64,000 nucleotides of DNA, taken from the NCBI RefSeq assembly GCF_048593235.1, contig NC_133617.1, positions 385,520,067 to 385,584,066 on the forward strand, read 5' to 3'. Below the pieces are notes generated by a model that saw only the letters and a program-made list of their open reading frames with translations, did no database searches and had not been told where the DNA came from. The position numbers were made by a program, and so were the translations under genes. The first letter of the stretch is position 1, and the number at the start of each line of letters is the position of its first letter. The stretch comes from Sminthopsis crassicaudata (taxonomy: Eukaryota). This document shows positions 35,408 through 38,650 of this stretch, piece by piece.

Positions 35408-35780
35408 TGTAACGAGCTGTTGTCTCCAGAAGCTGCTGATCGCTCTCTGGAAGGAGATCTGCTGTGTCAACTCAAATCTCTCCAACAGATTCTTCTTCCT
35501 GTAGTGAACCGTTGTCTCCAGGCAGTTGCTGTTAACTCTTGTCCAAAGAAGTGACTTCCCTTCCTGCAGAGAGCCCCGTCAAGCCTGATGCAATTCAGAG
35601 TCTTCCTCTCTTCCTGGAGTGCTGTCCTCTTTATCCTCCCAGAGAATGGGCGTGGGATAATGCAAGGGCTTCTGGGAAGAACCACTTCAGCCAATGGGCT
35701 TGCTCCTTCTATCAAGTCAACCTGAGTTCTCACCTTGTAACTATCCAGACAACCTCAGTTCTCACTTAGTAATCCTAACA
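35408..35780 (-). repeat. 3' LTR of young ERV
   Basis: No difference from 38278-38650 found by eye. Preceded on the minus strand by the PPT. Confidence 0.95.
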
Positions 35781-35797
35781 TCTCCCCCTTTCTTTTG
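35781..35797 (-). promoter_or_regulatory. Polypurine tract of young ERV
   Basis: Minus strand ...CAAAAGAAAGGGGGAGA immediately abutting the 3' LTR TGTTAGG. Confidence 0.9.
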
Positions 35798-36088
35798 ATT
35801 TAGAACATAGGACAGTCATGACCTTGAAACATAAATCCATCAATATGGGAAGTATTACAGATAATTACATAAATTACATAAGCACATAGTAACATAGTAA
35901 CATAACACATGCTAGAAGTATATAACATAATCATAATCAAATAATCATAAATTGAAAATTTATAAATGTCCATAAGTCCATTGTCCATTAGTCTCATCTT
36001 GTGTGAGGAAGTCCAATGATTCCTGCTGGTTTTTAAAGTTCTTTAACAGTCTTCTTATTATCCATGATCTTTCAGTGTCAGATGTTTC

Positions 36089-36278
36089 TTAGATCTTCTC
36101 CTTTATTTTGAGGTCTTTCTCTTTTTCTGTCTCTCTCTGGTGGACAAGGCGAATATGACTCGTTGGCACCCATCTGATTCCTTCTCCTGCTGAAGAAATA
36201 CAAGCAAACCCTCTCTCCCAGGCAGTTAACCTATCTAATTACCTTCTATTTACCACTTTCTAAATCTCTTCTCATCAT
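36089..36278 (-). pseudogene. Decayed integrase C-terminal domain remnant of young ERV
   Basis: MMRRDLESGK*K/(frameshift)LDRLTAWERGFACISSAGEGIRWVPTSHIRLV resembles the betaretroviral IN tail (W.D...W.GP...WGRGFAC...W.P). It has one stop and a 1-nt frameshift. Confidence 0.8.
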
Positions 36279-36285
36279 CTGGCAA

Positions 36286-38034
36286 TTACATTGGAATTGT
36301 TTGCACTGGACACAGCCCTGTTGGTTTAAAAGGCCTGTATTCTCCCCAAGTGTAATCCATTTTTGCAATCTGATTGCCTTTTGGCTCACTTATTAGGTAA
36401 TCCCTTTCTGCCATGTGATTGCTTTTCTGCTGGTTGATCAAATCAGAGTCCTGGCCTTCTAAAGGTTCTTTGGGTGTAACATCAGCTGCCATCATGCCCC
36501 AAGTCTTTTTTGCCTGGGGCCCTGAACCTGGGCCCCTCATCCCATTTCCCTGAATTATTCTACACTCTGATGCCCAATGGAATCCTCTGTTGCATTTTGG
36601 ACATGGGGTTTTAGGTCTTCTCTCACCCTGTCTTTTCACTGTATCTCCAAATCTACACTGAGCTCTTAGATGTCCAATTTTTCCACATTGAAAACATCGC
36701 CGAGTTTCTCTAGAAGGCCCTTGCCAGGAGGGACCCTGTCTTTCCACATTCATCATTGTCCGGGTGTAAAAAGCATTTGTTCCCACTGTAGCACAGCGTC
36801 TTATGATCTCCTCTAAAGGAGCATCTTTGTCTAATCCCCATATAATTCTTTTGCAAATCTCATTGGCATTTTCCTTAGCCAGATGTCTGGTCATTATTTC
36901 TGTAGCTGAATTTTCTCCAATAGTTCTTTTGACAGCAGTTTGCAAACGTCCCACAAAATCTGCAAAAGGTTCATTGGGACCTTGCTGTATTTTAGTGAAA
37001 GCCTCTCCACGATCTTTCTGTCCAGGAAGGACACCCCAAGCTTTTATTGCAGCCTTAGCAATTTGCTCATATATTGTCATGGTATAATTAATCTGTTCCG
37101 AATTCTCTCCATACTGACCTTCACCAGCTAAGTGCTCAAAAGTGAATTGTGTGTTAACTCCTATTTCCAAATTGCATCTGACTTGAATTTTACATAATTC
37201 ATGAAATTCCGCAAGCCATAATAAATTTTCTCCAGGTTCCAGACATGTCCTTGCTATGGATTTCCAATCATTCGGGGTTAGGACTTCATAAGACAAACCA
37301 TCTAGTAACATTTTGACATAAGCTGATGTAGCCCCATAAAGGGTACAACCTTTTTTCAAATCCTTAATTTTATTCAAATCTAAAGGTGCATATCTTCTCC
37401 TTTTTTTACCTACAGAGTCAGTATTTTCAATCACAGGATATGCATGTATAAAATCACTTATATCCTGTCCTTCTCTCTTAGCTTTAATCAATGCTTTTTC
37501 TAATCTTGTCATAGGCTTAGGCTGCTTCACAGGCAATTCTGTTTGTGTTTCTGCCTCTTCCTCTCCTCCTTCTTGCTCCACCCCTGAAGGGTTAATTGAG
37601 GGAGGAGATGGGAGGTGCTCCTGTTGCTGTTGCTCAGAATTGTACTTAACTTCATTGTTATCTGATTCATCCTTTTCACCTAGTTTAGTTGACACCTCCC
37701 CATTTTGCTCCTTCATCTCTTCCTTTAGAATAACATTTTTTAAAGCCATTTGGATTAAATTGTAGGTATGAATTGTATCTTTGGAAACTGAGTTTGGTCT
37801 GGAACCAAAGGGTAAAATGTCACAAAGACAATTGTAGTGTTCACCTAATTGCTCTCCTACTAATTCCCATTCATCTGGATCCAATTCTTCTTCCAGAGAA
37901 AAAGAAGGACATATGACCTTCACAGTTCTTAAAAGTTCAGTAATCTCCTCTAAAATTATAATCAATCCTTGGCTTTTCATAACCTTGATGATGCTCTCTA
38001 AACATTTTCCTTGAACAGAAGGTGTTTGCCCCAT
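36286..38034 (-). CDS. gag: Retroviral Gag polyprotein (MA-CA-NC), 582 aa, stop-free
   Basis: Starts MGQTPS (myristoylation-type). Contains the CA major homology region IQQGPNEPFADFVGRL and two CCHC knuckles, CFQCGKIGHLRAQC and CPKCNRGFHWASEC (betaretroviral pattern). Confidence 0.95.
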   Translation of the reverse strand: MGQTPSVQGKCLESIIKVMKSQGLIIILEEITELLRTVKVICPSFSLEEELDPDEWELVGEQLGEHYNCLCDILPFGSRPNSVSKDTIHTYNLIQMALKNVILKEEMKEQNGEVSTKLGEKDESDNNEVKYNSEQQQQEHLPSPPSINPSGVEQEGGEEEAETQTELPVKQPKPMTRLEKALIKAKREGQDISDFIHAYPVIENTDSVGKKRRRYAPLDLNKIKDLKKGCTLYGATSAYVKMLLDGLSYEVLTPNDWKSIARTCLEPGENLLWLAEFHELCKIQVRCNLEIGVNTQFTFEHLAGEGQYGENSEQINYTMTIYEQIAKAAIKAWGVLPGQKDRGEAFTKIQQGPNEPFADFVGRLQTAVKRTIGENSATEIMTRHLAKENANEICKRIIWGLDKDAPLEEIIRRCATVGTNAFYTRTMMNVERQGPSWQGPSRETRRCFQCGKIGHLRAQCRFGDTVKRQGERRPKTPCPKCNRGFHWASECRIIQGNGMRGPGSGPQAKKTWGMMAADVTPKEPLEGQDSDLINQQKSNHMAERDYLISEPKGNQIAKMDYTWGEYRPFKPTGLCPVQTIPM

Positions 38035-38256
38035 TTCACTATAAAAGATTGCTGGTTTAGCCCTTAACAAGTTCCTTATTTATCTATTAGCACACTCACT
38101 TAATCTTTAACAAAGTTTCCTTGTTACTCACGGTTCTGGGTCAGAGAGACTGAGATCTGGATGGGAGGCTTTTCCACTGGAATCAGGACCGTGTCTGGGC
38201 ACCAAATTGCGAAGGTCTGGTCTAGCTCCTCTTGTCAGAAATAAGCAAAAGTCCTT

Positions 38257-38275
38257 GCCCCACGTGTGGACGCCA
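38257..38275 (-). promoter_or_regulatory. Primer binding site, tRNA-Lys(CUU)-like variant
   Basis: TGGCGTCCACACGTGGGGC, 2 nt after the 5' LTR. Compared with the canonical Lys1,2 PBS TGGCGCCCAACGTGGGGC it has one substitution and one inserted base. Confidence 0.85.
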
Positions 38276-38277
38276 AA

Positions 38278-38650
38278 TGTAACGAGCTGTTGTCTCCAGA
38301 AGCTGCTGATCGCTCTCTGGAAGGAGATCTGCTGTGTCAACTCAAATCTCTCCAACAGATTCTTCTTCCTGTAGTGAACCGTTGTCTCCAGGCAGTTGCT
38401 GTTAACTCTTGTCCAAAGAAGTGACTTCCCTTCCTGCAGAGAGCCCCGTCAAGCCTGATGCAATTCAGAGTCTTCCTCTCTTCCTGGAGTGCTGTCCTCT
38501 TTATCCTCCCAGAGAATGGGCGTGGGATAATGCAAGGGCTTCTGGGAAGAACCACTTCAGCCAATGGGCTTGCTCCTTCTATCAAGTCAACCTGAGTTCT
38601 CACCTTGTAACTATCCAGACAACCTCAGTTCTCACTTAGTAATCCTAACA
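38278..38650 (-). repeat. 5' LTR of young ERV
   Basis: Minus strand TGTTAGG...GTTACA, followed by the PBS. Contains a 25-bp U3 direct repeat (38579-38603 and 38611-38635), CCAAT (38561-38565) and TATA-like GATAAA (38505-38500). Confidence 0.95.

What the first reader, a model, noticed from the sequence alone, without database searches (positions are those of the whole stretch)
35408..38650. Very young gag-only endogenous retrovirus: intact Gag, identical LTRs, pro/pol/env gone
Seen: the 373-bp LTRs show no differences, there is a perfect 6-bp TSD, PBS and PPT are present, and the 582-codon gag is uninterrupted. It is followed directly by an integrase tail that already carries a stop and a frameshift. 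Inference: identical LTRs leave little time for decay in place, so the deletion and IN damage predate integration and the element was copied in this form using enzymes supplied in trans. Gag staying open while adjacent pol rotted suggests selection on Gag, either cis-preferential packaging of its own RNA into mixed particles or interference with a helper virus. This would be a Gag-encoding parasite of a retrovirus, distinct from non-coding ETn-type elements, and possibly still mobile and polymorphic.
Basis: partly seen in the sequence, partly recalled or inferred. Interest (0 to 1): 0.85.

Follow-up and report, generated by a model that had tools for sequence, protein, structure and literature searches.

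The report
Gag-only satellite of a marsupial retrovirus
This is a very young copy of a multi-copy, 3.2-3.5 kb "gag-only" deletion derivative of the env-less dasyurid endogenous betaretrovirus MEBrv 3. It can only have spread using the enzymes of full-length relatives, which is a known kind of parasite-of-a-parasite, here in a form not yet described for marsupials.

Summary
On the minus strand there are two identical 373-bp LTRs, a perfect 6-bp target-site duplication, a PBS, a PPT and an uninterrupted 582-codon gag (MA, CA, two zinc knuckles). This is followed by a damaged integrase C-terminal remnant.

The host is the fat-tailed dunnart or a very close relative. Nine other loci on four dunnart chromosomes carry the same LTR-gag-IN remnant-LTR structure. 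Each has its own 6-bp duplication, and LTR pairs are 94.4-100% identical. All ten copies share the same class of IN damage, so the deleted form itself has been copied for a long time.

One full-length 6.4-kb relative (L010) has related LTRs, the same variant PBS, and open gag-pro and pol frames. Its Pol C-terminus is 47/48 identical to the window's remnant.

Peptide words tie the family to published MEBrv 3. Env was already absent in the parent.

Selection on Gag is only partly supported. It is strong in the sister subfamily (dN/dS 0-0.15), but changes in the window's own subfamily look neutral (3 synonymous, 18 non-synonymous). Cis-packaging, interference and current mobility were not tested.

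Verdict: a real, new variant of a known kind (IAP IΔ1, ETn, bovine D-type, plant TR-GAG).

The parts
35402..35407 (.). Target-site duplication, copy next to the 3' LTR (CAAAAC on + strand)
   Evidence: Identical hexamer on both flanks
35408..35780 (-). 3' LTR, 373 bp, TG...CA. It holds a 32-bp unit repeated twice at its U3 end
   Evidence: Exact repeat of 38278-38650; TRF; LTR alignment with 7 other copies
35781..35796 (-). Polypurine tract abutting the 3' LTR
   Evidence: Read; the same tract precedes the 3' LTR in all other copies
35797..36088 (-). Non-coding, A+T-rich post-pol region with short tandem repeats. There is no env
   Evidence: No ORF or Pfam hit; TRF; colinear with the post-pol region of full-length L010
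36089..36325 (-). Integrase C-terminal remnant: the last ~81 codons of pol, covering the whole IN DNA-binding domain. It is a broken gene with 2 frameshifting indels and 1 stop relative to L010 Pol. Its 5' end overlaps the end of the gag ORF
   Evidence: Pfam IN_DBD_C E=7e-4; 47/48 identity to L010 Pol 842-889; break counts; peptide words found only in the MEBrv 3 Pol record
36286..38034 (-). gag, 582 codons plus stop, uninterrupted. MA (Gag_p10) 37828-37995, CA-NTD 37018-37392, CA-CTD 36799-37005, zinc knuckles 36655-36699 and 36559-36603, and a C-terminal tail whose last ~12 codons look integrase-derived
36326..36547 (-). Remnant of the 5' part of pro, in the -1 frame and overlapping the gag tail. 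It is a broken gene (several stops and frameshifting indels relative to L010), while the overlapping gag frame is open
   Evidence: Translation of the -1 frame; likeness to the Pro N-terminus of P0014 and of the MEBrv 3 record; counts
36495..36550 (-). Gag/pro ribosomal-frameshift-like site (heptamer plus G+C-rich hairpins). The match is weak
   Evidence: Rfam RF01097, 31.3 bits versus gathering score 43, E=0.0076; fold -23.5 kcal/mol, z=-2.1
38035..38256 (-). Leader. It contains a second, degenerate PBS-like sequence at 38186-38204
   Evidence: In copy L007 the LTR extends through the first PBS up to this second site, which is a clean 18-mer there
38257..38275 (-). Primer-binding site, a variant form shared with L002, L004, L005 and full-length L010. 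L001, L006, L009 and L011 carry a form that differs by one base and is one base shorter
   Evidence: Assignment to tRNA-Lys rests on my own knowledge; no tRNA gene was available for comparison
38278..38650 (-). 5' LTR, 373 bp, identical to the 3' LTR
38651..38656 (.). Target-site duplication, copy next to the 5' LTR

Best explanation
The element is one recent insertion of a multi-copy, non-autonomous 'gag-only' family derived from the env-less dasyurid betaretrovirus-like ERV MEBrv 3. The family arose by a single ~3.0-kb internal deletion that removed almost all of pro and pol and joined the end of gag to the last ~81 codons of integrase. It keeps everything needed in cis: LTRs, PBS, leader, PPT and the post-pol region. 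It encodes only Gag. Its RNA is transcribed from the LTR and packaged, probably together with other family RNAs. It is then reverse-transcribed and integrated by protease, RT and integrase supplied in trans by full-length elements such as L010. Shown here: the shared structure, the independent integrations, the shared ancestral damage, a coding-competent relative, and mosaic (recombinant) copies. Inferred: trans-mobilisation itself, and that Gag made by the element contributes to its own propagation. The second inference is supported by purifying selection in one subfamily but not in the window's own.
For: Structure. Host and relatives: with named hits from Sminthopsis crassicaudata. Ten copies have the same colinear LTR-gag-IN remnant-LTR layout, sit on 4 chromosomes, and have ten different 6-bp TSDs. 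LTR-pair identity runs from 94.4% to 100%, and four pairs are identical (WIN, L002, L006, L009), so activity was long-lasting and recent. All ten share the same class of IN-remnant damage. Full-length L010 is 6,386 bp with one LTR mismatch, TSD CTGAAG and the same variant PBS. Its ORF1 is 785 aa (MA-CA-NC-PR) and its ORF2 is 889 aa (RT, thumb, RNase H, IN Zn, core, DBD), and DTGA, YMDD, HHCC and D,D35E motifs are present. The window aligns to L010 on both sides of a 3,022-bp gap. The IN piece is 47/48 identical to the end of L010 Pol. Six peptide words from the window's Gag, its pro frame and its IN remnant each occur exactly once in the supplement holding the eight marsupial ERV clade representatives. 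All six are in the MEBrv 3 record. MEBrv 3 is published as env-less and active in dunnart, with a 469-bp LTR. Coding retention: gag is fully open in 6 of 10 copies and nearly so in a seventh. CA-NC dN/dS is 0.00-0.15 among L002/L006/L007/L009, with p down to 9e-7. The overlapping pro frame is broken in all copies while the gag frame stays open. Mosaicism: WIN versus L002 differ at 2/505 positions after gag and 3.7% in the leader, and are saturated in the first 148 codons.
Against: No retrotransposition or packaging was observed, so trans-mobilisation is an inference. Only one full-length copy was reached, and its gag and pro lie in a single frame, so its competence as a helper is unproven. The sample is biased: copies were reached through annotated Gag proteins of 320-1018 aa, which favours gag-only loci with open frames. 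In the window's own subfamily (WIN, L004, L005) substitutions look neutral: 3 synonymous and 18 non-synonymous, and WIN versus L004 dN/dS is 1.0. Low dN/dS in the sister subfamily could have been imported by recombination with full-length elements whose gag is under selection. The window's 373-bp LTR is shorter than the 405-472 bp of its relatives. A 128-N gap lies only 200 bp from the element.
Confidence: 0.8

Rival explanations
1. Gag is not functionally important to the element. The gag sequence is kept because it holds cis-acting RNA signals (an extended packaging signal, dimerisation or export elements) or simply because the copies are young. The protein would then be a by-product, and the family an ETn-like passenger that happens still to have an open frame.
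For: In the window's own subfamily the substitutions look neutral: 3 synonymous and 18 non-synonymous, and WIN versus L004 dN/dS is 1.0. L004 has lost the glycine that follows the initiator Met yet its frame is open. With about 2% divergence an open 582-codon frame is not improbable by chance (my estimate). Three of ten copies already have breaks.
Against: The sister subfamily shows a strong excess of synonymous change: L006 versus L007 is 9 versus 0, and private changes are 7 synonymous and 3 non-synonymous, p=0.001. Constraint on RNA structure alone does not predict that pattern. The overlapping pro frame decayed while the gag frame stayed open in the same nucleotides. Two very different MA-coding 5' parts are both open.
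Confidence: 0.3
2. The Gag of gag-only copies acts mainly against full-length elements or related exogenous viruses. It would be a trans-dominant or copy-number-control Gag, as with sheep enJS56A1, mouse Fv1 or yeast Ty1 p22, so the family would be kept partly through a benefit to the host.
For: Gag lacks its own protease and carries a foreign C-terminal end, features that could disturb co-assembly. Purifying selection is seen in one subfamily. NCBI models several of these loci as protein-coding genes.
Against: There is no single conserved orthologous locus. Instead there are many young, dispersed insertions, each with its own TSD and complete LTRs, which is the signature of a replicating element rather than a domesticated gene. 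Nothing here bears directly on interference.
Confidence: 0.1
3. The 'identical LTRs' and compact structure are an assembly artefact (collapse, polishing or gene conversion), and the copy is older or structurally different in reality.
For: A 128-N gap lies 200 bp from the 3' LTR. The window's exact Gag is not among the gene products on record for the public dunnart assembly.
Against: Three other copies in an independent chromosome-level assembly also have 100% identical LTR pairs, and four more are at least 99.15% identical. The element has clean TG...CA ends and a perfect TSD. A 3.2-kb element is shorter than typical long reads (general knowledge).
Confidence: 0.05

Closest known systems
MEBrv 3 (marsupial endogenous betaretrovirus 3; Harding et al. 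2024, PMC11334065)
   Same: Same clade. Gag NC and tail, the Pro N-terminus and the Pol C-terminus share exact peptide words found only in that record. It is env-less, has a 6-bp TSD and a similar leader and LTR end, and is reported active in dunnart with identical LTRs.
   Different: MEBrv 3 is described as ~7.3 kb with gag, pro and pol. This element is 3.2 kb and lacks pro and pol apart from an IN remnant. Full-text search of the paper found no description of a gag-only derivative. The window's LTR is 373 bp, against 469 bp.
Mouse IAP IΔ1 elements
   Same: An internally deleted, non-autonomous derivative of an env-less betaretrovirus-like ERV. The deletion creates a gag-pol fusion ORF, the element needs Gag and Pol in trans, it dominates new insertions, and its own translated product is reported to act in cis (review PMC6466679).
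   Different: IΔ1 has a 1.9-kb deletion and keeps much of pol. Here ~3.0 kb is gone, only 81 damaged IN codons remain, and the ORF stops about 12 codons into them. A cis effect of the protein has not been tested here.
MusD/ETn, bovine ERVK[2-1-LTR] C/D types, KoRV/recKoRV
   Same: Autonomous and non-autonomous partner pairs that share LTRs and flanking internal sequence, with the defective partner over-represented. There is pervasive recombination between partners, and the 'parasite-of-parasite' idea is already formulated (PMC10924933).
   Different: In those pairs the defective partners lack intact ORFs and carry swapped-in foreign central segments. Here a simple deletion retains a full Gag ORF, which is under purifying selection in at least one subfamily.
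Plant TR-GAG elements (Chaparro et al. 2015, PMC4350172)
   Same: An LTR retroelement under 4 kb with PBS and PPT and a single ORF encoding only GAG; non-autonomous (abstract).
   Different: TR-GAG elements are plant Ty1/Ty3-type retrotransposons unrelated in sequence. This element is a vertebrate retrovirus derivative that also keeps an IN remnant.
Domesticated or interfering Gag genes (Fv1, enJS56A1, Ty1 p22); comparison from my own knowledge
   Same: Gag-only coding capacity that can act on related elements.
   Different: Those are single loci or internal products with shown restriction activity. This is a dispersed, recently transposing family, and no restriction evidence exists for it.

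Membership tests
LTR retroelement / provirus | Two direct LTRs with TG...CA ends, flanked by a short target-site duplication | tested here: met
   373-bp identical LTRs and a 6-bp TSD
LTR retroelement / provirus | PBS directly 3' of the 5' LTR and PPT directly 5' of the 3' LTR | tested here: met
   both are conserved in position in all 10 other elements. The identity of the primer tRNA was not tested (searches found no tRNA gene to compare).
Betaretrovirus-like (class II) ERV | Gag with betaretroviral MA (Gag_p10), CA, and two CCHC knuckles; gag/pro frameshift arrangement | tested here: met
   Pfam; best PDB matches are betaretroviral and HERV-K capsids. The frameshift-site match is only weak: Rfam 31.3 bits against a cut-off of 43.
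MEBrv 3 clade | Sequence likeness to the clade representative in Gag, Pro and Pol, exclusive of the other seven marsupial clades | tested here: met
   Six words of 5-13 residues from the window each occur once, only in the MEBrv 3 record. A by-eye reading of that record agrees. No formal alignment or RT phylogeny is possible, because RT is absent from the element.
MEBrv 3 clade | No env; gag-pro-pol of ~7.3 kb; LTR ~469 bp | tested here: inconclusive
   No env is present. Pro and pol are deleted, so the length criterion fails by construction. The LTR is 373 bp here but 405-472 bp in sister copies. The full-length dunnart relative is 6.4 kb.
Non-autonomous, trans-mobilised ERV derivative (IAP IΔ1 / ETn kind) | Lacks its own PR, RT and IN but keeps the cis elements | tested here: met
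Non-autonomous, trans-mobilised ERV derivative (IAP IΔ1 / ETn kind) | The same deleted form occurs at many unrelated sites, each with its own TSD | tested here: met
   Ten copies with ten different TSDs on four chromosomes
Non-autonomous, trans-mobilised ERV derivative (IAP IΔ1 / ETn kind) | A coexisting coding-competent partner with matching LTR and PBS | tested here: met
   L010. This is one copy only, and its activity is unknown.
Non-autonomous, trans-mobilised ERV derivative (IAP IΔ1 / ETn kind) | Demonstrated mobilisation by the partner's proteins | not testable with these tools
   No functional data are available
TR-GAG-type element | Shorter than 4 kb, with LTRs, PBS and PPT and a single ORF encoding only GAG | tested here: met
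   3,243 bp, and gag is the only domain-bearing ORF. The class is defined in plants, so this is a likeness of architecture and not of descent.
Domesticated Gag gene (Fv1 / enJS56A1 kind) | A single fixed locus kept by host-level selection that is no longer transposing | tested here: not met
   The copies are multi-copy, with identical LTRs and intact termini. Orthology across species is not testable here.

The most novel reading that the evidence does not exclude
Dasyurid MEBrv 3 may have split into a two-component system. Gag-only elements, kept under purifying selection (dN/dS about 0.1 in the L006-type subfamily), would supply protease-free Gag and their own preferentially packaged RNA. Full-length elements, in which gag and pro lie in one continuous frame in the one copy seen (L010), would supply the enzymes. 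That would be a division of labour, or an obligate satellite-helper pair, inside a mammalian genome rather than simple decay.
Probability: 0.15. Interest if true: 0.7.

Novelty: new variant of a known kind. Interest (0 to 1): 0.45.

Why it matters
Dasyurid genomes are dominated by MEBrv 3, which the literature links speculatively to genome instability in this cancer-prone family. If many of those copies are gag-only satellites, then counts of 'active ERVs', estimates of insertional load and models of how the family will die out all change, as argued for the bovine parasite-of-parasite case. The family also offers a natural contrast: one subfamily with Gag under strong constraint and another without. 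That contrast could show, from sequence and expression data alone, whether a non-autonomous retrovirus benefits from encoding its own capsid protein.

Tried and rejected
(1) Looking up the window's exact Gag in the contig index found nothing. I therefore cannot say whether the window comes from the public assembly or whether the insertion is polymorphic.

(2) Protein searches for dunnart Pro/Pol gave no dasyurid Pol, using a metagenomic Gag-Pro relative and a Tasmanian devil RT ORF. The full-library HMMER search with Gag returned no long Gag-Pro-Pol. The helper was found only with the second-to-last contig look-up.

(3) The Tasmanian devil locus L008 is an older relative, about 72% identical in gag, with gag-pro-RT-RNase H but no IN tail. 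It did not help to place the IN remnant.

(4) Rfam found nothing above threshold. In particular there is no known export or packaging element in the post-pol region.

(5) No tRNA genes occur in the window or loci, so the primer tRNA could not be tested.

(6) There are no further copies or solo LTRs of this family elsewhere in the 64-kb window.

(7) I considered and rejected segmental duplication (the flanks and TSDs are all different), a domesticated gene (multi-copy and young), and independent recurrent deletions (the IN damage is shared).

(8) I made no formal alignment with the published MEBrv 3 record, because that would have required pasting a long sequence. I used short-word searches instead.
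Full report
**Observation**

The finding is on the minus strand. An exact 373-bp repeat occupies 35408-35780 and 38278-38650, with no differences and TG...CA ends. The hexamer CAAAAC (+ strand) flanks both sides. Read 5' to 3' on the minus strand, the element contains:
- the 5' LTR;
- two bases, then a 19-nt PBS-like sequence;
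- a 222-nt leader;
- an uninterrupted gag of 582 codons (38034-36286);
- about 500 nt of non-gag sequence;
- a purine tract abutting the 3' LTR.

Pfam finds Gag_p10 (betaretroviral matrix), both capsid domains and two CCHC knuckles. The best solved-structure matches are betaretroviral and HERV-K capsids.

**Host and relatives**

The closest proteins in the 5.8-billion-protein collection are NCBI models from Sminthopsis crassicaudata, the fat-tailed dunnart, at 98%, 88% and 78% identity. Tasmanian devil models follow at 59-66%. Cluster look-up gave twelve annotated dunnart Gag proteins. I fetched the loci of ten of them.

**The structure is a family**

Nine of the ten loci carry the same LTR-gag-short tail-LTR element, 3.2-3.5 kb long. 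They are L001-L007, L009 and L011. Each is colinear with the window's element straight through the gag-to-tail transition.

Each copy has its own 6-bp target-site duplication, and the copies lie on four chromosomes:

| Copy | TSD |
|---|---|
| window | GTTTTG |
| L001 | GTTTAC |
| L002 | ACATCC |
| L003 | GTCAAT |
| L004 | ACTATT |
| L005 | GGGGGA |
| L006 | TTGTCC |
| L007 | TCTAGC |
| L009 | GATAAA |
| L011 | CTTTTC |

LTR-pair identity varies with the copy:
- 100% in the window, L002, L006 and L009;
- 99.15-99.57% in L001, L004, L005 and L007;
- 97.8% in L011;
- 94.4% in L003.

The deleted form has therefore been integrating repeatedly, from long ago until very recently. With no differences in 2 x 373 bp, the 95% upper bound on this copy's age is 3/(746 x rate). 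That is roughly 0.8-1.8 million years for assumed rates of 5 to 2.2 x 10^-9 per site per year. This is my inference, because the dasyurid rate is not known to me.

**The tail and the parent**

A 49-codon piece of the tail hits Pfam IN_DBD_C just under threshold (E=7e-4).

The tenth locus, L010, holds a full-length relative:
- It is 6,386 bp, with 405-bp LTRs that differ at one base, TSD CTGAAG, and the same variant PBS as the window.
- Its first ORF, 785 codons, carries MA, CA, NC and protease in one continuous frame.
- Its second ORF, 889 codons, carries RT, thumb, RNase H and all three integrase domains.
- The DTGA, YMDD, HHCC and D,D35E signatures are present.

The window's element aligns to L010 on both sides of a 3,022-bp gap that removes nearly all of pro and pol. 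The 49-codon piece is 47/48 identical to the very end of L010 Pol. The last twelve residues of the window's Gag align, weakly (E=0.009), to Pol residues 810-821. This fits an in-frame gag-integrase fusion that terminates shortly afterwards.

Measured against the last 81 Pol codons of L010, all ten gag-only copies carry the same class of damage: 2-3 frameshifting indels and one stop. The post-pol region is colinear with L010, so no env was lost in this element.

**Which published family**

Harding et al. 2024 (PMC11334065) describe MEBrv 3. It is an env-less, ~7.3-kb betaretrovirus-like ERV with 469-bp LTRs. It makes up about two thirds of dasyurid ERVs, and copies with intact gag, pro and pol and identical LTRs occur in dunnart, quoll and antechinus.

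Their supplement holds one annotated representative of each of eight marsupial clades. Six short peptide words taken from the window each occur exactly once in that file. The words come from Gag NC and tail, the -1 pro frame and the IN remnant. All six occurrences are in the MEBrv 3 record.

Full-text search of the paper found no description of a gag-only or non-autonomous derivative. Sister copies have LTRs of 405-472 bp. The window's 373 bp results from lacking one 32-bp U3 repeat unit and a ~55-bp segment.

**Is Gag under selection?**

Gag status in the ten copies:

| Status | Copies |
|---|---|
| Fully open | window, L002, L004, L005, L006, L007 |
| Open but about 31 codons short | L009 |
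| Broken: one stop | L001 |
| Broken: one frameshift | L011 |
| Broken: one frameshift and one stop | L003 (the oldest copy) |

This sample is biased towards open frames, because the loci were reached through annotated proteins.

I ran Nei-Gojobori comparisons on CA-NC (codons 149-495, outside the pro overlap). Within the L002/L006/L007/L009 subfamily dN/dS is 0.00-0.15. For example, L006 versus L007 shows 9 synonymous and 0 non-synonymous differences (p=9e-7). Between these copies and full-length L010 it is 0.07-0.13.

The window's own subfamily (WIN, L004, L005) behaves differently:
- WIN versus L004 gives dN/dS 1.0.
- Changes private to these copies or fixed for the subfamily total 3 synonymous and 18 non-synonymous, which is indistinguishable from neutrality (p=0.85).
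- Private changes in the other gag-only subfamily are 7 synonymous and 3 non-synonymous (p=0.001).

An internal control points the same way for the family as a whole. In the gag/pro overlap the gag frame is open, while the pro frame carries several stops and frameshifting indels in all copies.

Two caveats apply. The counts are small. The copies are also mosaics, so constraint could have been imported by recombination with full-length elements. As an example of the mosaicism, WIN and L002 differ at 2 of 505 positions after gag and by 3.7% in the leader, and are saturated in the first 148 codons. There they carry two different MA types, each with a Tasmanian devil or MEBrv 3 counterpart.

**Mechanism**

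The best-supported reading is a non-autonomous satellite of MEBrv 3. It would be transcribed from its LTR, co-packaged with related RNAs (which would account for the mosaics), and reverse-transcribed and integrated by enzymes from full-length elements such as L010. Trans-mobilisation, cis-preference and interference are inferences and none was tested.

The closest experimental precedent is mouse IAP IΔ1. There a deletion creates a gag-pol fusion ORF, the element depends on full-length IAPs, it dominates new insertions, and its own translation product is reported to act in cis. The general parasite-of-parasite idea is also already set out for bovine ERVK C/D, MusD/ETn and KoRV/recKoRV. Plant TR-GAG elements have the same architecture.

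**Verdict**

The element is a real member of a previously undescribed (as far as I could search) gag-only derivative family of a published ERV clade. That makes it a new variant of a known kind, of moderate interest.

While reasoning I noted, relative to translated pieces, roughly where the frame of the IN remnant changes. Neither is repeated here beyond the bounds of the parts, and nothing was deleted. Alignment tools printed consensus lines on their own, and I did not use them.

Noticed in passing
window 38186-38204 (-) and L007:5743-5811 plus the following 18 nt: All copies carry a second PBS-like sequence about 68 nt downstream of the first. In copy L007 both LTRs extend through the first PBS and leader up to this second site, which is a clean 18-mer there. 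This suggests that copy was primed from the second site, i.e. alternative primer use within one family.
   Followed up: partly
L010:7338-13723: A full-length 6.4-kb relative in which MA-CA-NC and protease lie in one continuous 785-codon frame. The quoll MEBrv 3 record instead has separate, overlapping gag and pro frames. Several metagenome-derived relatives (P0005, P0010, P0014) also have CA-NC and protease in one frame.
   Followed up: partly
window 5466-6541 (+): An older, degraded class II ERV fragment: a 169-codon ORF ending in a protease motif, followed by an RT N-terminal fragment. It is 42-56% identical to the Tasmanian devil relative's PR and RT, and it has no LTR or gag of the family studied here.
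   Followed up: partly
window 48587-52279 (-): A 1,230-codon open frame, serine/proline-rich, with no Pfam domain. It is most likely a very large coding exon of a host gene. It lies on the same strand as the ERV, which sits about 10 kb downstream of it, so the ERV may be a sense-oriented intronic insertion.
   Followed up: no
window 35081-35208 and 11591-11770: Runs of N (128 and 180 bases). The first lies only 200 bp from the element's 3' LTR.
   Followed up: no
window LTRs 35709-35772 / 38579-38642; L006:5294-5381: The U3 end of the LTR holds a 32-bp tandem unit, present in 2.0 copies in the window and L002 and 2.8 in L006 and others. Together with a ~55-bp indel after the TATA-like box, this explains LTR lengths from 373 to 472 bp.
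   Followed up: yes
L004:10001-11749 (P0025): This otherwise open 582-codon gag has arginine in place of the glycine that follows the initiator Met. It would therefore lack the usual N-terminal myristoylation signal, which fits relaxed constraint in this subfamily.
   Followed up: no
L008:8930-14077 (Sarcophilus harrisii): A Tasmanian devil relative about 5.1 kb long with gag, pro, RT and RNase H but no integrase, and LTRs only 84.5% identical. It is an old, differently truncated member of the same broad lineage.
   Followed up: partly
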